Source: Octopus sinensis (Eukaryota). Taken from it: a stretch of DNA of 13,835 nucleotides. Position numbers and translations under genes: made by a program. A model generated the notes under the pieces. That model worked only from the letters and a program-made list of their open reading frames with translations. It was not told where the DNA came from and did no database searches. The DNA lies in the NCBI RefSeq assembly GCF_006345805.1, contig NW_021826002.1:1-13835 (forward strand), written 5' to 3'. Below are positions 2,765 to 10,916 of the stretch, one piece after another. Numbering within the stretch: the first letter of the stretch is position 1; each line of letters begins with the position of its first letter.

Positions 2765-3075
2765 TCTGGTGCCTTTACACTCTACTCAGGTTCTACAGAC
2801 ATGGCACAGCAAGCCAAAGGAGGGCGCTAGAATAAGAGAAAATACGAGAAAATGCGAGAAGCATGTAGATGTAACAGGTGGAAGGTTGAAAACACCGGAA
2901 AACGAAAAAGAAAAAAAAGAGAAACCGAAAAGAGACGGAGAATTAGATTTATGTTTCCTTTGACCGTAAAGTCATAAGGATGAATGGTTAGGAGCCTAGA
3001 ATATGTGGTGCAGCTGTTCGATCTTGAAAGGGTGGTATTGTCCAATTTGCCAAAAGGGCCTCATCCATACGTTTA

Positions 3076-3494
3076 CTTATTTCTTTATTGCCCACAAGGG
3101 GCTAAACATAGAAGGGAAAAATAAGGACATACAAAAGGATTAAGTCGATTACATCAACCCTAGAGCATAACTGGTACTTTATTTATCGACCCCGAAAGGG
3201 TGAAAGGCAAAGTCGACCTCGGCGGAATTTGAACTCACAACGTAAAAGCAGACGAAATACCTATTTCTTTACTACCCACAAGGGGCTAAACACAAAGAGG
3301 ACAAACAAGGACAGACAAACGGATTTAGTCGATTATATTGACCCCAATGCGTAACTGGTACTTATTTAATCGACCCCGAAAGGATGAAAGGCAAAGTCGA
3401 CCTCGGCAGAATTTGAACTCAGAACGTAACGGCAGACGAAATACTGCAAAGCATTTCGCCCGGCGTGCTAACGCTTCTGCCAGCTCACCGTCTT
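3076..3494 (-). mobile_element. Dimeric tRNA-derived SINE (family A): full monomer 3494-3262 plus 5'-truncated monomer 3261-3076
   Basis: The minus strand has an A-box-like TGGCAGAAGCGTTAG and a B-box GAGTTCAAATTC. The body (GGTCGACTTTGCCTTTCA..CTTTCGGGGTCGAT) and tail (CCCCTTGTGGG..AAAGAAATA) are repeated in both monomers. A 13-bp TSD, ATCCATACGTTTA, lies at 3063-3075 and 3495-3507. Confidence 0.92.
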
Positions 3495-3571
3495 ATCCAT
3501 ACGTTTATATTGGCTGAAAATTCCAGATCTAGGTTTCAGTAAGGCGGTGGAGTTTTCGGATCTGAAAACGA

Positions 3572-3960
3572 TGTGAAAAGGTGCTTTGTTTCCCTAGCAC
3601 ATGCTTCCGGATTCAGTCCCACTGCGTTGCACCTTGGGCTATTGCCTTTTACCACAGACTCGAGTAGATGGAAACTGAAAGAATCCCGTCGTATACATAG
3701 GGTAAAGAGTAAAGAGTATATACATATATATGTATGTGTGCGTGTATGTGTGTTTATCCCCCACTACCGCTTTACAACCAGTGATGTTGTGTTTAAGTCG
3801 CCGTAACCTAGCGCATTGGCAAAAGGGGTCGATATAATAAGTGCTTGACTTAAAATAAAACGCCTGGGGTTGATTCAGTCTACTAAAATTTCTTCAAGGC
3901 GGCTCCCCCTGCATGGCCGCTGTATAATGACTGACACAAAATAAAGATAAAAGATTAAAG
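3572..3960 (+). mobile_element. Diverged tRNA-derived SINE (family B) with internal microsatellite
   Basis: Aligns by eye to the reverse complement of 7094-7510 (TTCAGTCCCACTGCG, CACCTTGGGC, GGAAACTGAAAG, CGTAAC..AGCG..GGCAAAAG, CATGGCCGC, AATGACTGA, TAAA(A)GA tail). It is more diverged and lacks part of the middle. Confidence 0.8.
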
Positions 3961-4131
3961 ATGTATATTCAGAAGCAGTAGCAGTAGCAGCAGGATCTTA
4001 GTCTTTCATTTCTTAAGAAAATATTCTATCTTTTGTTTCTCTAATCTATAGACAGTAATATATTTATTATTTAAAACATCTAACTTTTTCTCACACCGGA
4101 TGTTCCATGTAAATCTTTTATTCTTTATACT

Positions 4132-4154
4132 ACACACACACACACACACACACA
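4132..4154. repeat. (CA)n microsatellite
   Basis: Perfect AC run of about 11 units. Confidence 0.9.
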
Positions 4155-4389
4155 TGCTGAAAGAAATACACCCCACCCATCTCCCACACCTGCTCCTTCT
4201 GTCCTTTCCCGTATCACATCGTGATTTAACTGTAAACGGTTATGCACCCTTGTCATAATACATAGACAAGAACGTGCTTACATACATTCAAGCCTATACA
4301 CCCGTACACGCTCTCTCAAAGAAGATACATTATACTTGCAAGCATCAGTGACTTAGCACAGCCATTACCGCGGGAAGTTCGATTATTAA

Positions 4390-4671
4390 ACCAATGAATC
4401 AGAAAAGAAATATACAGGAAATATCCTATTCAATGTCTTATATGAGATCATGATATACCAAACTGTCTTTGACAGTGTTTGGGAACAAAATACAATAACA
4501 TCGACACGATATTCTGTTATTAAGAGAACAAAGAGTCGGGAGACGTCATTACATGATGGTGATATCGCGAAAAAAGAAAGAAAGAAGTCTGCTACTGTCT
4601 TCATGATGGTGGATGTCTTTTATCAACTTTGTTGGCTAAAATTCAAAGAAATTCTTTATTCACATAGTTAG
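4390..4671 (+). pseudogene. Possible decayed class A GPCR TM5-TM6 fragment (weak)
   Basis: The open frame reads ..EKKYTGNILFNVLYEIMIYQTVFDSVW..KKERKKSATVFMMVDVFYQLCWLKF. It has a basic patch, a hydrophobic run and CWL, as at the ICL3/TM6 junction, but the CWxP proline is missing and no NPxxY follows. Confidence 0.2.
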
Positions 4672-5229
4672 GAACTATTCTCTCTATGGTTGTTCAGTCC
4701 CCGGCCCGACCAGATCAGAATGACTTAGGGGTGAATGCCGTGATGATATCGTGTTTTATTCCCAGCAACGTACCTCCAGAGATATTATTAAAATTCTCCT
4801 TCTTCTTCCAAAGGGCTATGATCGTATTCGAGATAATTTATTCTTTTATTCTTTTATTTGTTTCAGTCATTTGAATGCAGCCATGCTGGAGCAACACCTT
4901 GAGGAGATTACTTATTTAAGCCTACTACATATTCCATCGCTGTTTCTTGCCGAATCGCTACGTTACGGGGACGTAAACAAACCAAAACCAGTTGTGAAGC
5001 AGTGATGCTGGAGAGTGGGGGACAAACACAGAAACAAACAAGCACATAAACACGCATATACATACAAACATACACGTTTATATATGCGAAGGGCTTCTTT
5101 CAGTTTCCGTCTACCAAATCCATTCACAAAGGCTTCAGTCTCCCCGAGGCTATAGAAGAAGATACTTACCCGAGGTGTCACGCATTGGAACTGAACCCAG
5201 AACCCTGTGGTAGGGAAGCAAACTTCTTA

Positions 5230-5435
5230 TTTCTTTACTACCCACAAGGGGCTAGATTCAGAAGGGACAAACAAGGACAGACAAACGGATTAAGTCGATT
5301 ATATCGACCCCAGTGCGTAACTGGATTAAAGCAAAGTCAACCTCAGGCGGAATATGAACTGAGAACGTAGCAGCAGACGAAATATCACTAAGTATTTCGC
5401 CCGGTGTGCTAACGCTTCTACCAGCTCAAAGCCTT
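5230..5435 (-). mobile_element. Family A SINE monomer, 3' part of the rRNA-SINE chimera
   Basis: Highly similar to 3262-3494 from head (GAGCTGG.AGAAGCGTTAGCAC) to tail (CCCCTTGTGGGTAGTAAAGAAA). It carries an internal deletion of roughly 25-30 bp near 5325 and a B-box variant GTTCATATTCC. Confidence 0.92.
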
Positions 5436-5584
5436 CGACTGGACGGGGGGCCCCGGGACGATGGCATCTCGGGGCCTCAATGTGCGTTTGAGGTGTCGAT
5501 GTTCACGGAGTCCTGCAATTCGCATCAGTTCACGCAGATAGCTGCGCTCTTCGTCGACGGACGAGCCGAGTGATCCCTCGTCCC
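5436..5584 (-). rRNA. 5.8S rRNA: 5.8S rRNA-derived sequence, near full length; dispersed retrocopy (pseudogene), not an rDNA unit
   Basis: The minus strand reads GGATCACTCGGCTCG..CGACGAAGAGCGCAGC..CTGCGTGAACTGATGCGAATTGCAGGAC..GAACATCGACACCTCAAACGCACATTG, then a GC-rich hairpin GGCCCCG..CGGGGCC. These are the metazoan 5.8S motifs in the correct order and spacing, over 149 bp. No ITS, 18S or 28S sequence flanks it. Confidence 0.93.
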
Positions 5585-5709
5585 AAGCAAGCTTCTTACC
5601 ACACAGCCACGTCTGTGCCTATATTTGGTTAATATTTCCAACCAGTTACTCAGTCTCATAAATGGAGGTTTGTTGCCTCACTGCTGTATAATGTATTTAG
5701 CACTGGGAT

Positions 5710-5862
5710 GATGGTAAGTTAACACAAATCGTTAAGCGCGCCGGGCAAAATGCTTTTCGGGCGTTTCGTCAATCTTTGCGTCACCAGTTCAAATTCAACC
5801 GAGGTAGACTTTTGTTCTTCATCGTTTCCGGGTCGGTAAACTAACTACTAGTTCTGCACTGG
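5710..5862 (+). mobile_element. Old, 3'-incomplete family A SINE
   Basis: AATCGTTAAGCGCGCCGGGCAAAATGCTT, B-box AGTTCAAATTC, CCGAGGTAGACTTT, TTCATCGTTTCCGGGTCGGTAAA and GCACTGG align to the reverse complement of the family A monomer with many substitutions. Confidence 0.8.
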
Positions 5863-5949
5863 AACATGGGTAGTAGGCTTACGACCACCTCCGAAGATGC
5901 TAGCATTGTGATAGAATTTAAAATCAGTATATTTAGTATTAAAGATTGT

Positions 5950-6850
5950 AGAAGAAGAAGAAGAAGAAGAAGAAGAAGAAGAAGAAGAAGAAGAAGAAGA
6001 GGTGAAGGAGGAGGGGGAAGAGAAGAAGTAGACGAAAGAGGGGGAGAAGGGGGATGGGGAGGTGGCGGTTTGGTGGTGGCGGTGGTGGTGGTAGTGGTGC
6101 AGGCGGGGGAGAGGGGGAGTAGACGAAGAAAAAAAGGAGCTGGAGGAGAAGAAGAAGAAAAAGAAGAAGGAGGAGGAGAAGAAGCAGAAGGGGAAGAAAA
6201 AGGAGAAGAAGAAGGTGGAGGAGGAGGAGTAAGAAAAGGAGGAAAAAACGCTGGAGGAAGAGAAAAAAGGAGAAGGAGGAGAAGAAGGTGCAGGTGGGAG
6301 AGGGGTGACAAGAAGAAGAAGAAGAAGGAGAAGAAGAAGAAGAAGAAGAAGAAGAAGAAGAAGAAGAAGAAGAAGAAGAAGAAAAAGAAGAAGTGGCCGA
6401 TGAAAAGGACGAGGTAGTCGACAGAATAAGGCTGAAGTGGTGGTGGTGCAGGCGGGAGAGGGATGAGAAGAAGAAGAAGAAGAAGAAGAAGAAGAAGAAG
6501 AAAAGAAGAAGAAGAAGAAGAAGAAGAAGAAGAAGAGGCCGATGAAAAGGACGAGGTAGTCGACAGAATAAGGCTGAAGTGGTGGTGGTGCAGGCGGGAG
6601 GGGGATGAGAAGAAGAAGAAGAAGAAGGAGAAGAGGAAGAAGGAGAAGAAGAAGAAGAAGAAGAAGAGGCCGATGAAAAGGACGAGGTAGTCGACAGAAT
6701 AAGGCTGAAGTGGTGGTGGTGCAGGCGGGAGGGGGATGAGAAGAAGAAGAAGAAGAAGAAGAAGAAGAAGAAAAGAAGAAGAAGAAGAAGAAGAAGAAGA
6801 AGAAAAGAAAAGGAAGAGGAGAAAAAGAACAAAGAGAAAAGTGGTTGAGA
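5950..6850 (+). repeat. Complex (GAA)n/(GGA)n/(GGT)n purine-rich tract
   Basis: Long GAA runs interleaved with GGA and GGT blocks and with the 71-bp units listed separately. Confidence 0.95.
6395..6738 (+). repeat. Three near-identical 71-bp units separated by variable GAA spacers
   Basis: GGCCGATGAAAAGGACGAGGTAGTCGACAGAATAAGGCTGAAGTGGTGGTGGTGCAGGCGGGAG(A/G)GGGATG at 6395-6465, 6537-6607 and 6668-6738. Confidence 0.95.
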
Positions 6851-7093
6851 GGAAAAGTGCTTTGGTGTTGGTGAAGGCGATAATGATGATCCATATACCA
6901 GAGAGTTGTCAGTTTAATTGAATGATATTTAAAAAAAAAAATCTAATCTACGAAAACTAAACAGCAATATGTACACTTGCGCACAAACATGCATTCACAC
7001 ACACTCGCCAACATACATATATGTACATACATATGTGTGTGGCTGTGTGAGTGTGCGTGTGTGTGTATGTGCATGTAGGTATATATATATATA

Positions 7094-7311
7094 TTTACTC
7101 TTTTACTCTTTTACTTGTTTCAGTCATTTGACTGCGGCCATGCTGGAGCACCGCCTTTAGTCGAGCAAATGGATCCCCGGGACTTATTCTTTGTAAGCCC
7201 AGTACTTATTCTATCGGTCTCTTTTGCCGAACCGCTAAGTAACGGGGACGTAAACACACCAGCATCGGTTGTCAAGCAATGCTAGGGGGACAAACACACA
7301 GACACACAAAC

Positions 7312-7348
<37 letters not shown>

Positions 7349-7510
7349 CATATATACGACAGGCTTCTATCAGTTTCTGTCTACCAAATCCACTCACAAG
7401 GCATTGGTCGGCCCGGGGCTATAGCAGAAGACACTTGCCCAAGATGCCACGCAGTGGGACTGAACCCGGAACCATGTGGTTGGTTAGCAAGCTACTTACC
7501 ACACAGCCAC
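7094..7510 (-). mobile_element. Family B tRNA-derived SINE, well preserved
   Basis: The minus strand has a tRNA-like head (GTGGCTGTGTGGTAAG A-box; GGTTCAGTCCC B-box), a CTTGGGCAAG motif reminiscent of the CORE domain, an internal AT/GT microsatellite and a (AGTAAAAG)n tail. Confidence 0.93.
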
Positions 7511-9304
7511 CATAAATACATGGTCACAAACATGCATAAAGATGGAGATGGACGAAATAGAAAGAACTCCATTTGCACTTTAAGTATGTCTGAGATAGCA
7601 TGCCCGTTTCTCGTGTCACTCAGGCTCATGATAAGATTTCCTATGCATGATATTTTCATTACCACGCTATGTCATATTTTTCTCATTCTCTTTTCCTTCA
7701 TTTCTTTATTTCACTTTATTTTCCTTGAAACTTCCTTCAGCACGCCGACGAAAGGTGTGTTTCTCAATAATCAAGTAATTTCAACAAGTGTGATAGCAAT
7801 TTCCGCTCAACTATCATTCTGTTTTCCTATTCCAGCCCCCCCCCCCCACCACCACCACCACCACCTTTTCTTCCGCTATGTTATACAGATGCTAAATTAC
7901 CGTAATGTAAACATATACTTAAAAGAATCCATCTTATGGTCTGCCACATCTTGACTTCATAAAACACCCACTTATTTGCGGTGATCGACCATATGTAATG
8001 TACACCTTTGACCTTCTTTAGTCAGTCAGTGTCGCTCCTGTGACAACATCACTGCATTATAACCTTATTAAAGCTGCCCTCTGCCGTTCGCCGTCTTTTG
8101 TTACCACTTCCTGTAGCGATATAAATATGCAGAACAGAAGAAACAACAAAGGCAGTAACAGTAATGTCGTCCTGTATAGTAAATTTGAAATTTATTAATT
8201 GCTTCACTTAATTAAGTTTTATTAATTGCTATGTCACATCTAAAAGTACAGCATAACCGTTAGCCATAAATCCAGCAACATAAGCACCAGTAGTCCGAAC
8301 AAAAATATAACTTGGTTACCGAGCTATAAATATCAGTTATGTGTTTTTCCCAATTGATATTTGAAGGAAGATAAACTGTAAAATGTAGCCAACTCATGAA
8401 ATATATATTAGACAGCGGTCACGGCTAAAATCCGCTTTTCTTGATCCGGTATCCTATGAGCCTATCAAAAGCGTAGTATATATAACCTTGCGCAGTTCAA
8501 AGTTAACAATAATAATAAGTGAAGATAGACATAAACGGATTGAGTCGAGTGAATTCTGATTAATTATTAAATATTCAATGAACGTTGACATTTGATCTTC
8601 TCAGTAATCAGCCAAAAGGACAGTTAAGCTAAATTTCACAGTGAAACCAAATATGTATAAATAGATAAGATTCGCATCTATATACCCGTAGTCTCCTGAA
8701 CAGATTTTATTAATGCTACAGATGCAGACAGCGCTGAAATATTTATTCCTTAACATACAATTGTTATGAAGGTTCCTTGAAGATTGTGGGTCGTGAACCT
8801 TAAGTTCCATAATTGATCCGAGCAGTATATATGTGTACATTTAGTTATTCATAACCACACTGCATTGCTAGTTCAATAATTATTGTACTGTCATCGATTA
8901 CCTTGTAAATATATATGTAAATGGGCAGTGGTAGTGAAAATGTTGAATTATGTTTAAATTAGTGATAAAAACTTAATAGTTTGGGGAAGGAGAAGAGTTG
9001 ACTCTGGTAAATTATTAATAAACCAGGGAACTACTCACAGCAATAGTCATTGTGATTGTTATCATGTGTTATGTTTTTGTTTATACTGCCTTGAAAAATT
9101 CAAATCCTTCATTCTTACTGGACCCCACCCCCAGAGCAAGTGCAAGGAAAGGAATTAGCTACCATTTGAACGTAAATAACGCCCGAATCGATACAAGACG
9201 AGGAAATCTGTTTGTGTCTCTGGACGATTGATTAAATTTACCAGGTAGAAATTCAGTAGCGGAGGCGCTATACATAGATTTATAACGTTATATATATATA
9301 TATA

Positions 9305-10014: not shown

Positions 10015-10049
10015 AGAAGAAGTGGGGGAAGTAGAAGACGAAGAAGAAG

Positions 10050-10081
<32 letters not shown>

Positions 10082-10161
10082 GGAGGAGGAGGAGAAGGAG
10101 GAGGAGGAGAAGAAGAAGAAGAAGAGGAAGTAGAAATAGAAGAAGAAAAAAGAAGAAGAAA

Positions 10162-10192
<31 letters not shown>

Positions 10193-10224
10193 AGAGGAGG
10201 AAGTAGAAATAGAAGAAGAAGAAA

Positions 10225-10256
<32 letters not shown>

Positions 10257-10886
10257 GAAAAAGAAGAGCAGGAGGAGGAAGAAAAGAAACAAGAAGAAGA
10301 AGGAGAAAAAGAAGAAGAAGAAGAAAAGAGAGCAGGAGGAGAAGAAAAAGAAACAAGAGAAGAAGAGAAAAAAAGAGAAGAAAAGAAGAGCAGGAGGATG
10401 AAGAAAAGAAACAAGAAGAAGAAAAGAAGAAGAAGAAGAAGAAGAAGAAGAAGAAGAAGAAGAAGAAAAAGAAGAGCAGGAGGAGGAAGAAAAGAAACAA
10501 GAAGAAGAAGAAGAAGAAGAAGAAGAAGAAGAAGAAGAAGAAGAAGAAGAAGAAGAAGAGCAGGAGGAGGAAGAAAAGAAACAAGAAGAAGAAGTAGAAG
10601 AAGAAGAAGAAAAGAAGAAAAAGAAGAGCAGGAGGAGGAAGAAAAGAAACAAGAAGAAAAAGAAGAAGAAGAAGAAGAAGGAGAAGAAGAAGAAGAAGGA
10701 GAAGAAGAAGAAGGAGAAGAAGAAGAAAGAGAAGAAGAAGAAGAAGAAGGAGAAGAAGAAGAAGGAGAAGGAGAAGAAGAAGAAGAAGAAGAAAAAGAAG
10801 AGCAGGAGGAGGAAGAAAAGAAACAAGAAGAAGAAGAAGGAGAAGAAGAAGAAGAAGAAGAAGAAAAGAAGAAGAAGAAGAAGAAG

Positions 10887-10916
<30 letters not shown>
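10015..10916 (+). repeat. Complex (GAA)n tract with a higher-order unit repeated 7 times
   Basis: Almost purely purine on the + strand. The unit GAGCAGGAGGAGGAAGAAAAGAAACAAG (or close variant) starts at 10266, 10330, 10388, 10474, 10558, 10626 and 10800. Confidence 0.95.

What the first reader, a model, noticed from the sequence alone, without database searches (positions are those of the whole stretch)
5216..5598. 5.8S rRNA-SINE chimeric retro-insertion bounded by a single target-site duplication
Seen: on the minus strand a near full-length 5.8S rRNA (5584-5436) is joined with no spacer and in the same orientation to the 5' end of a nearly complete family A SINE (5435-5230). The 355-bp unit is flanked by AAGCAAACTTCTTA (5216-5229) and AAGCAAGCTTCTTA (5585-5598), a 14-bp TSD with one mismatch, and the host family B SINE resumes exactly after it. 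This indicates one integration event that copied both RNAs. Established: LINE machinery makes such chimeras (U6-L1 in mammals) by template switching or prior RNA ligation, and SINE heads derived from 5S and 28S rRNA exist. Inference: this is either a one-off rRNA/SINE chimera or a member of a 5.8S-headed composite SINE subfamily; I do not know of one described in cephalopods. The terminal 7 nt (TCGTCCC, 5578-5584) do not resemble a typical 5.8S 5' end and are the inverted copy of GGGACGA at 5455-5461, which could be a fold-back scar or chance.
Basis: partly seen in the sequence, partly recalled or inferred. Interest (0 to 1): 0.8.

Follow-up and report, generated by a model that had tools for sequence, protein, structure and literature searches.

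The report
5.8S rRNA–SINE chimeric retrocopy
A dead copy of 5.8S ribosomal RNA fused head-to-tail to a short mobile element (SINE) was pasted in one event into another SINE; this is a clean but ordinary example of a reverse transcriptase jumping between RNA templates.

Summary
On the minus strand, a near full-length 5.8S rRNA copy (5584-5431; Rfam RF00002, 81 bits, E 3e-19) joins a family A SINE (about 5427-5230) in the same orientation. The 355-bp unit is flanked by TAAGAAGCTTGCTT / TAAGAAGTTTGCTT, a 13/14 match reached by 0 of 1000 shuffles. Removing it restores a colinear family B SINE. Neither half has its own duplication, and there is no ITS or other rDNA, so one integration copied two RNAs.

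- The "odd" 5' heptamer GGGACGA is genuine 5.8S. Real rDNA units with the closest 5.8S read ...AACCCTGGACGGGGGATCAC, so no fold-back scar is needed. The copy only lacks the first 5-6 nt.
- 5.8S homology runs 5 nt further, to 5431. Then come 2-3 T's, then a SINE lacking its first 5-7 nt and carrying a 26-bp internal deletion.
- Both halves carry similar private decay (about 6-8%).

A second single-duplication bipartite product, a SINE A dimer, lies at 3491-3076.

I could not test one-off versus family, because no searchable collection held host-lineage DNA. 5.8S has no known pol III promoter, so I favour a one-off. This is a new member of the known class of bipartite chimeric retrogenes, and interest is low to moderate.

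The parts
5585..5598 (-). 5' copy of the target-site duplication (minus strand TAAGAAGCTTGCTT). It is part of the head of the host SINE B.
   Evidence: 13/14 match to 5229-5216, exactly abutting the insert, reached by 0 of 1000 shuffles.
5431..5584 (-). Retro-copied 5.8S rRNA pseudogene, covering about nt 6/7-156 of a roughly 158-nt mature RNA. The first G (5584) is a mismatch or an untemplated base.
   Evidence: RF00002, 81.4 bits, E 2.7e-19; 87.7% identity to real rDNA 5.8S over 5583-5431, with no ITS on either side; 34 derived positions shared with those real genes.
5428..5430 (-). TTT at the junction. Possible origins: non-templated addition at the template jump, a 3' U-tail or CUU-type end of the 5.8S, or (last T only) the first retained SINE base. 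The assignment is ambiguous.
   Evidence: these bases match neither the real 5.8S/ITS2 sequence (GGCGGAAAA) nor the SINE A 5' end (GACGGTGAGCTGG), except that the last T fits the SINE.
5230..5427 (-). Family A SINE. It lacks about 5-7 nt at its 5' end and has a 26-bp internal deletion. Its canonical tail ...AAAGAAATAAG overlaps the first 4 nt of the 3' TSD copy.
   Evidence: alignment with copies at 3491-3261 and 3260-3076; 12 private changes in 160 shared columns.
5216..5229 (-). 3' copy of the target-site duplication (TAAGAAGTTTGCTT).
5599..5622 (-). Host family B SINE, 5' portion upstream of the TSD (GGCACAGACGTGGCTGTGTGG...).
   Evidence: colinear alignment of the reconstructed empty site with the SINE B copy at 7130-7530.
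4836..5215 (-). Host family B SINE, remainder downstream of the insertion, through the (AAAAGAATA)-type tail.

Best explanation
This is a bipartite chimeric retrocopy made in one round of target-primed reverse transcription.

Proposed steps:
1. A LINE-encoded endonuclease/reverse transcriptase nicked a resident family B SINE at ...GG|TAAGAAGCTTGCTT|CCC....
2. The nicked end primed on the 3' tail of a family A SINE RNA. The target TAAG matches the SINE tail ...AUAAG, a microhomology.
3. The enzyme copied the SINE RNA to within about 5-7 nt of its 5' end.
4. It then jumped to the 3' end of a mature 5.8S rRNA, possibly after adding 2-3 untemplated bases, which now read TT(T).
5. It copied the 5.8S to within 5-6 nt of its 5' end.
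6. The cDNA was joined to the other side of the staggered break, which created the 10-14-bp duplication.

The product is a dead, decaying insertion with no function. It most likely did not amplify, because transcription from the SINE's internal promoter would start downstream of the 5.8S part.

Shown here: the anatomy, the single TSD, the origin of the 5.8S part from RNA rather than rDNA, and the equal decay of the two halves.

Inferred: the template jump itself (as opposed to RNA ligation), the LINE partner, and the one-off status.
For: - The 5.8S identity is significant and covers the full model.
- Homology to real rDNA stops at the mature-RNA borders. Nothing else in the 13.8-kb window matches 8 rDNA loci of up to 17.6 kb.
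- The TSD matches at 13/14, abuts the unit exactly, and is reached by 0 of 1000 shuffles. The best candidate repeats around the 5.8S alone or SINE A alone are reached by 7-100% of shuffles.
- The empty-site reconstruction is colinear with an intact SINE B.
- Private substitutions are 7.5% in the SINE A part and 5.5-8% in the 5.8S part, which fits simultaneous insertion.
- The same window holds a second bipartite product with one TSD, a SINE A dimer at 3491-3076. Template switching therefore seems frequent for this SINE's reverse transcriptase.
- The structure meets the published features of LINE-made bipartite chimeras, which list ribosomal RNAs among the 5' partners and include a non-coding RNA-SINE chimera in a fungus (PMC2104539).
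Against: - No second copy, empty orthologous site or junction-spanning read could be examined. The single-event reading rests on one locus.
- The 5.8S is not quite full-length at its 5' end, and the exact junction is ambiguous by about 8 nt. Partial similarity between the 5.8S 3' end (GAGAGGC) and the SINE 5' end (GACGG) contributes to this.
- Template switching cannot be told apart from prior RNA-RNA ligation, or from retrotransposition of a read-through transcript of an older chimeric locus.
- The host's own 5.8S gene was not available. The comparison genes come from unidentified marine eukaryotes.
- The partner LINE was not identified.
Confidence: 0.75

Rival explanations
1. The two RNAs were already one molecule before reverse transcription. 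Either the 5.8S 3' end was ligated to the SINE RNA 5' end by an RNA ligase, or an older genomic 5.8S-SINE locus was read through and transcribed. That single RNA was then retrotransposed normally. There was still only one integration, but no template jump at this locus.
For: This gives the same anatomy: a single TSD, the same orientation, and near-terminal joining of both RNAs. The TT(T) at the junction could be a U-tail on the 5.8S 3' end.
Against: Both RNAs are trimmed by a few nucleotides at the junction, and the SINE lacks 5-7 nt. That is more typical of a polymerase leaving its template early than of end-to-end ligation. The neighbouring SINE A dimer joins a tail to an internal position, about nt 52, which ligation of intact RNAs does not explain. 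So template switching does operate in this genome.
Confidence: 0.12
2. The unit is one member of an amplifying composite SINE subfamily with a 5.8S-derived head. It would be comparable to 5S-, 28S- or snRNA-headed SINEs.
For: The element is compact, at 355 bp. It keeps the SINE's 3' tail, which the partner LINE needs. Its 26-bp internal deletion could be a subfamily marker. SINE heads derived from rRNA exist (5S and 28S, cited in 10.1101/2025.02.02.635956). No available search could exclude other copies.
Against: The two other SINE A copies in the window lack any 5.8S. 5.8S rRNA is cut from a pol I precursor and has no known internal pol III promoter (established knowledge). The SINE's own promoter lies downstream of the 5.8S part, so transcripts would lose that part. 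The 5.8S part is a plain near full-length copy with no sign of remodelling. No such family came up in the literature searches.
Confidence: 0.07
3. There were two independent insertions. A 5.8S retropseudogene and a SINE A landed next to each other, one exactly at the end of the other.
For: SINE density is very high here, with nested insertions and at least five SINE copies or fragments in 14 kb. A weak resemblance exists between GAAGCTT in the TSD and GAAGGCTT / GAAGCGT near the junction.
Against: No TSD better than chance flanks either part alone. The best matches are 5-7 nt and are reached by 7-100% of shuffles. The outer TSD brackets the whole unit and restores the host SINE. A tail-less 5.8S RNA is a poor stand-alone substrate for a tail-specific LINE (inference). 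The equal decay of both halves also argues against it.
Confidence: 0.04
4. It is an assembly or sequencing artefact joining rDNA reads to a SINE.
For: rDNA and SINEs are both high-copy sequences and are prone to mis-joins.
Against: The 5.8S part is a decayed pseudogene, with 81 bits against 117 bits for real genes. It has mature-RNA borders, no ITS, and a TSD that restores the host element. A mis-join would not produce these features.
Confidence: 0.01

Closest known systems
Bipartite chimeric retrogenes made by LINE template switching (Buzdin, Gogvadze and co-workers; mammals and Magnaporthe grisea, including WEIRD-Mg-SINE chimeras; PMC2104539)
   Same: The 5' part is a (near) full-length abundant non-coding cellular RNA. 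The 3' part is a 5'-truncated retroelement RNA. The two are joined directly in the same orientation, and one short direct repeat (14 bp here, as in their tripartite example) flanks the whole. Ribosomal RNAs are listed among known 5' partners.
   Different: The partner here is 5.8S rRNA, which I did not find named in the papers searched. The 3' part is a SINE with a specific non-poly(A) tail rather than L1 or MGL. The host is apparently a cephalopod mollusc. The 5' part lacks 5-6 nt.
U6 snRNA-L1 chimeras of mammals and the wider set of L1 chimeras (U3, U5, 5S, tRNA, 28S, 7SL, Y, 7SK; 10.1101/2025.02.02.635956; PMC4476161)
   Same: A small abundant nuclear or nucleolar RNA is fused upstream of a retroelement 3' part, with one TSD. 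The mechanism is template switching or RNA ligation during TPRT.
   Different: Those are recurrent classes with many independent loci, made by L1. Here only one locus is known, the reverse transcriptase is unidentified, and the 3' partner is an almost complete SINE rather than a truncated LINE.
SINEs with rRNA- or snRNA-derived heads (SINE3/5S, SINE28, SINEU)
   Same: A ribosomal or small nuclear RNA sequence sits at the 5' end of a LINE-dependent short element. Such families probably began as chimeras of this type.
   Different: Those heads carry or acquired a working promoter, and the elements amplified to many copies. Here nothing shows amplification, and 5.8S has no known pol III promoter.
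Octopus tRNA-derived SINEs OK, OR1 and OR2 (Ohshima and Okada 1994, as cited in PMC4824008 and PMC4758252)
   Same: Families A and B look like the abundant short retroposons with specific tails that I recall from octopus genomes. Family B carries a CORE-like CCTTGGGCAAGT segment. Both points come from memory.
   Different: I could not assign A or B to a named family.

Membership tests
Bipartite chimeric retrogene (features i-v of PMC2104539) | (i) The 5' part is a full-length copy of a cellular RNA | tested here: met
   Rfam aligns model positions 1-154. Against real 5.8S, the copy covers about nt 6/7-156 of 158. It is near full-length, with 5-6 nt missing at the 5' end.
Bipartite chimeric retrogene (features i-v of PMC2104539) | (ii) The 3' part is a 5'-truncated copy of a retroelement or other RNA | tested here: met
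   SINE A starts at (T)GAGCTGG, whereas the full copy at 3491 starts (G)ACGGTGAGCTGG. The truncation is minimal, about 5-7 nt.
Bipartite chimeric retrogene (features i-v of PMC2104539) | (iii) Truncation or switch sites are scattered among independent chimeras | not testable with these tools
   Only one 5.8S chimera is available. The neighbouring SINE A dimer switches at a different position, about nt 52.
Bipartite chimeric retrogene (features i-v of PMC2104539) | (iv) The parts are joined directly in the same transcriptional orientation | tested here: met
   Both parts are on the minus strand, with at most 2-3 unassigned T's between them.
Bipartite chimeric retrogene (features i-v of PMC2104539) | (v) The whole chimera is flanked by short direct repeats | tested here: met
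   A 14-bp TSD matching at 13/14, reached by 0 of 1000 shuffles. None is found around either part alone.
Functional 5.8S rRNA gene / rDNA fragment | Embedded between ITS1 and ITS2 with 18S and 28S nearby, and with an intact structure | tested here: not met
   No SSU or LSU hit in the window. Only 5431-5583 matches rDNA loci that carry ITS, 18S and 28S. The score is 81 bits against 117 for real genes, with 5 broken pairs.
Composite SINE family with a 5.8S head | Many copies share the same 5.8S/SINE junction but have different flanks and TSDs | not testable with these tools
   No host-lineage DNA could be reached. The metagenome junction scan gave only chance hits. The protein-route searches gave rDNA only, or nothing. 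Window ORFs are not on record. Within the window, 0 of 2 other SINE A copies carry 5.8S.
Composite SINE family with a 5.8S head | The head supplies, or lies downstream of, a promoter, so that it is transcribed with the body | not tested
   From established knowledge, 5.8S is processed from a pol I precursor and has no internal pol III promoter. The SINE's box-like motifs (TGAGCTGGTAGAA, GTTCATATTCC) lie 3' of the 5.8S part.
tRNA-derived SINE (families A and B) | The head is recognisably tRNA-like | tested here: inconclusive
   ARAGORN finds no tRNA in the window. There is no Rfam tRNA match at E<=5 in 3000-7600. Only box A/B-like motifs are visible by eye.

The most novel reading that the evidence does not exclude
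5.8S rRNA could be a recurrent template-switch partner of this lineage's SINE/LINE machinery. That would be a cephalopod counterpart of U6-L1, with many independent 5.8S-SINE loci. More radically, this composite could have been re-transcribed and amplified as the first 5.8S-headed SINE subfamily. Nothing I could run excludes either reading, because no host genome sequence beyond the window could be searched.
Probability: 0.15. Interest if true: 0.5.

Novelty: new member of a known kind. Interest (0 to 1): 0.25.

Why it matters
It is a tidy natural record of a reverse transcriptase jumping from a SINE RNA to a ribosomal RNA in a mollusc. It has a non-repetitive duplication that proves a single integration. 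Together with the SINE dimer 2 kb away, it suggests that template switching is common for the enzyme that drives the large SINE expansion in this genome. Template switching is how new composite SINEs arise. It would also add 5.8S to the list of RNAs captured in chimeric retrocopies. Beyond that it has no functional implication. It also warns annotators that rRNA hits inside SINE-rich DNA may be retro-chimeras rather than rDNA.

Tried and rejected
**Fold-back scar for the terminal heptamer: rejected.**
- The 7 nt align to real 5.8S nt 7-13.
- A terminal 7-mer inverted repeat arises in 1.45% of shuffles, and the real genes lack it.

**Separate TSDs for each half: rejected**.

**rDNA fragment or DNA-level origin: rejected.** There is no ITS, 18S or 28S.

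**Searches for further junction copies or an empty site**
- A degenerate junction pattern scanned against metagenome contigs gave 24 hits. All were chance matches confined to the pattern itself.
- The antisense junction ORF searched against 5.8 billion proteins found only ORFs on real rDNA. This was useful, because it supplied the comparison genes.
- The sense junction ORF searched against 1.84 billion representatives gave 0 hits.
- A SINE B antisense ORF gave no candidates.
- Exact look-ups of three window ORFs found none on record.
- Conclusion: the collections hold no ORF-called DNA of the host lineage.

**Identifying the organism behind the comparison rDNA loci: failed.** I tried assembly and run accessions in the literature, cluster member names and SINE content of the contigs.

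**Finding the SINE consensus in papers by sequence strings: failed**.

**Compensatory pair as a lineage marker: downgraded.** The pair is CGCA..TGCG in the window against CGCG..CGCG in the real genes. I first read it as proof of a different source gene. Both changes are CpG transitions, so they may simply be decay.

**tRNA detection in the SINE heads: failed**.

Full report
**What is in the sequence**

All features below are read on the minus strand.

- The window runs ...GGCACAGACGTGGCTGTGTGG-TAAGAAGCTTGCTT (5598-5585). It is followed by GGGACGAGGGATCACTCGGCTCG..., a 5.8S-like segment, and then by ...GGCTTTGAGCTGGTAGAAGCGTTAGCAC....
- That last stretch is a SINE that ends ...GTAGTAAAGAAA. After it comes TAAGAAGTTTGCTT (5229-5216), and then CCCTACCACAGGGTTCTGGGTTCAG....
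- Rfam's 5.8S model (RF00002) matches 5589..5436 over its full length. The score is 81.4 bits against a gathering score of 42, with E 2.7e-19. It is the only family above threshold in the whole window, with no 18S or 28S.
- The SINE part matches two other copies in the window, at 3487-3264 and 3259-3080. The flanking element matches a second copy at 7483-7194.

**Is it one insertion?**

- The two 14-mers abut the unit exactly and match at 13 of 14 positions. No shuffle out of 1000 produced an equally good flanking repeat.
- I applied the same test to the 5.8S part alone, using three possible 3' borders. The best matches were only 6-7 nt and were reached by 7-42% of shuffles.
- The same test on SINE A alone, using three possible 5' borders, gave 0-5 nt matches reached by more than 50% of shuffles.
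- Deleting the unit plus one repeat copy gives a sequence that aligns colinearly with the intact family B copy at 7130-7530. The alignment runs straight through the insertion point: GGTAAGAAGCTTGCTTCCCTACCACAGGG against GGTAAGTAGCTTGCTAACCAACCACATGG.
- So the host SINE B (about 5622-4836) was hit once.
- The SINE's canonical tail, seen in the copy ending at 3076, is ...AAAGAAATAAG. The first four bases of the repeat (TAAG) could therefore be SINE tail. This is a microhomology between target and RNA 3' end, as expected for target-primed reverse transcription. The duplication is 10-14 bp.

**The 5.8S part compared with real genes**

- No eukaryotic genome database was available. I therefore translated the antisense frame across the junction and searched the protein collection.
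- It returned six short ORFs. Their contigs are genuine rDNA units, with 18S upstream and 28S downstream of a 117-bit 5.8S.
- The organisms are unidentified. The sources are two NCBI assemblies, Tara Oceans and other marine metagenomes, and two sequencing-run assemblies.
- Their 5.8S sequences are identical to one another and 87.7% identical to the window copy over 154 nt, covering 5583-5431.
- In a three-way comparison with the Rfam consensus, the window copy shares 34 derived positions with these genes. It shares 6 positions with the consensus only and has 8 private changes, plus 4 sites where all three differ. They are therefore close relatives of the source gene.

Three points follow from this comparison.

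- **The 5' end is genuine 5.8S.** The real genes begin AACCCTGGACGGGGGATCAC. The window's GGGACGAGGGATCAC is ordinary 5.8S of this lineage from nt 6/7 onward. The inverted heptamer at 5461-5455 is not present in the real genes, and such a match occurs in 1.45% of shuffles.
- **It is a copy of the mature RNA.** Nothing resembling ITS1 (…AAACAAAAC…) or ITS2 (GAAAATGGC…) is present, and no other part of the window matches up to 17.6 kb of rDNA.
- **The 3' boundary moves.** Homology continues to 5431: GTCCAGTCGA-AGGC against GTCCGGTCGAGAGGC.

**The junction**

- After ...AAGGC come TTT (5430-5428) and then GAGCTGGTAGAAGCG.
- The full-length SINE A at 3491 starts (G)ACGGTGAGCTGGCAGAAGCG.
- The SINE in the chimera therefore lacks its first 5-7 nt. 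Two or three T's are unassigned.
- Those T's could be bases added without a template at the jump, which would read as A's on the cDNA. They could be a U-tail or a CUU-type natural 3' end of the host's 5.8S. The last T could be the SINE's own.
- I cannot choose between these without the host's rDNA.
- The SINE also has a 26-bp internal deletion relative to both other copies.

**Age**

- In 160 columns shared by the three SINE A copies, the chimera's copy has 12 private changes (7.5%). The other two copies have 10 and 14.
- The 5.8S part has 8-12 private changes in 146 columns, or 5.5-8%.
- The two halves have decayed to the same extent, as expected if they arrived together. The insertion is old.

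**Mechanism**

- The anatomy meets four of the five published features of LINE-made bipartite chimeric retrogenes. These are a (near) full-length cellular RNA at the 5' side, a 5'-truncated retroelement at the 3' side, direct joining in the same orientation, and a single pair of short direct repeats.
- The fifth feature, scatter of switch sites, needs more loci (PMC2104539).
- That paper lists ribosomal RNAs among known 5' partners and describes a non-coding RNA-SINE chimera in a fungus.
- A 2025 survey of L1 chimeras names U6, U3, U5, 5S, tRNA, 28S, 7SL, Y and 7SK, but not 5.8S. My searches found no paper linking 5.8S to chimeric retrocopies or SINE heads.
- I therefore read the element as the product of one template jump: SINE RNA first, then 5.8S rRNA.
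- The rival of prior RNA ligation, or of read-through of an older chimeric locus, gives the same DNA and cannot be excluded.
- Template switching does operate nearby. At 3491-3076, a full SINE A is followed directly by a second SINE A that starts at about nt 52. The pair is flanked by one duplication: TAAACGTATGGATAAG (3507-3492) and TAAACGTATGGATGAG (3075-3060).

**One-off or family?**

- This could not be tested, because every route to more host DNA failed.
- Two arguments are indirect. Neither of the two other SINE A copies in the window carries 5.8S. And 5.8S is cut from a pol I precursor and has no internal pol III promoter (established knowledge).
- The SINE's box-like motifs lie downstream of the 5.8S part, so a transcript from them would not include it.
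- I put an amplifying family at about 7%. I put the broader novel reading, recurrent independent 5.8S chimeras or a family, at about 15%.

**Host**

- The SINEs look to me like the abundant octopus SINEs. This is from memory and is not verifiable here.
- OK, OR1 and OR2 are the described octopus families (Ohshima and Okada 1994, cited in PMC4824008 and PMC4758252).
- Neither ARAGORN nor Rfam recognises the heads as tRNA.

**Verdict**

The heptamer remark is refuted and the borders shift by a few bases. This is a well-documented example of a known phenomenon with a new RNA partner and a new host group. It is worth a line in a repeat annotation or a genome-wide survey, but it is not a new kind of element on present evidence.

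Noticed in passing
window 3060-3507 (minus strand): A full family A SINE (3491-3261) is followed head-to-tail by a 5'-truncated family A SINE (3260-3076, starting at about nt 52). The pair is flanked by a single 16-bp duplication, TAAACGTATGGATAAG / TAAACGTATGGATGAG. This is a second bipartite, template-switch-like product in the same 14 kb. TRF reports it as a 184-bp period with 2 copies.
   Followed up: partly
L001-L012 and L037-L044 (rDNA loci from two NCBI assemblies, marine metagenomes and two sequencing-run assemblies): These are real rDNA units, with a repeat of about 11.8 kb in L037. Their 5.8S has an unusual 5' region (AACCCTGGACGGGGG) and many derived positions shared with the window's pseudogene. 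The organism could not be identified with the tools. The loci contain no SINE A or B.
   Followed up: partly
window 5950-6829 and 10028-10916: There are very long, imperfect (AGA/GAA)n purine-rich triplet tracts of about 0.7-0.9 kb each. They create long spurious low-complexity ORFs on both strands.
   Followed up: no
window 6967-7113, 7302-7382, 3716-3757: Sub-threshold Rfam matches to miRNA families (mir-3149, mir-297, mir-1277) fall on TG/TA microsatellites, some inside SINE B copies. All score far below gathering thresholds and are best read as repeat artefacts.
   Followed up: partly
window 3664-3822 (plus strand): A family B SINE fragment lies in the opposite orientation, at 69% identity, immediately next to the SINE A dimer. 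At least five SINE copies or fragments lie within 14 kb.
   Followed up: no
window 5300-5330 compared with 3340-3400: The SINE A in the chimera lacks 26 bp (TCATCCTTTCGGGGTCGATTAAATAA-like) that both other copies have. The deleted segment ends near one copy of an internal GGGGTCGAT direct repeat. It may be a slippage deletion or a subfamily marker.
   Followed up: no
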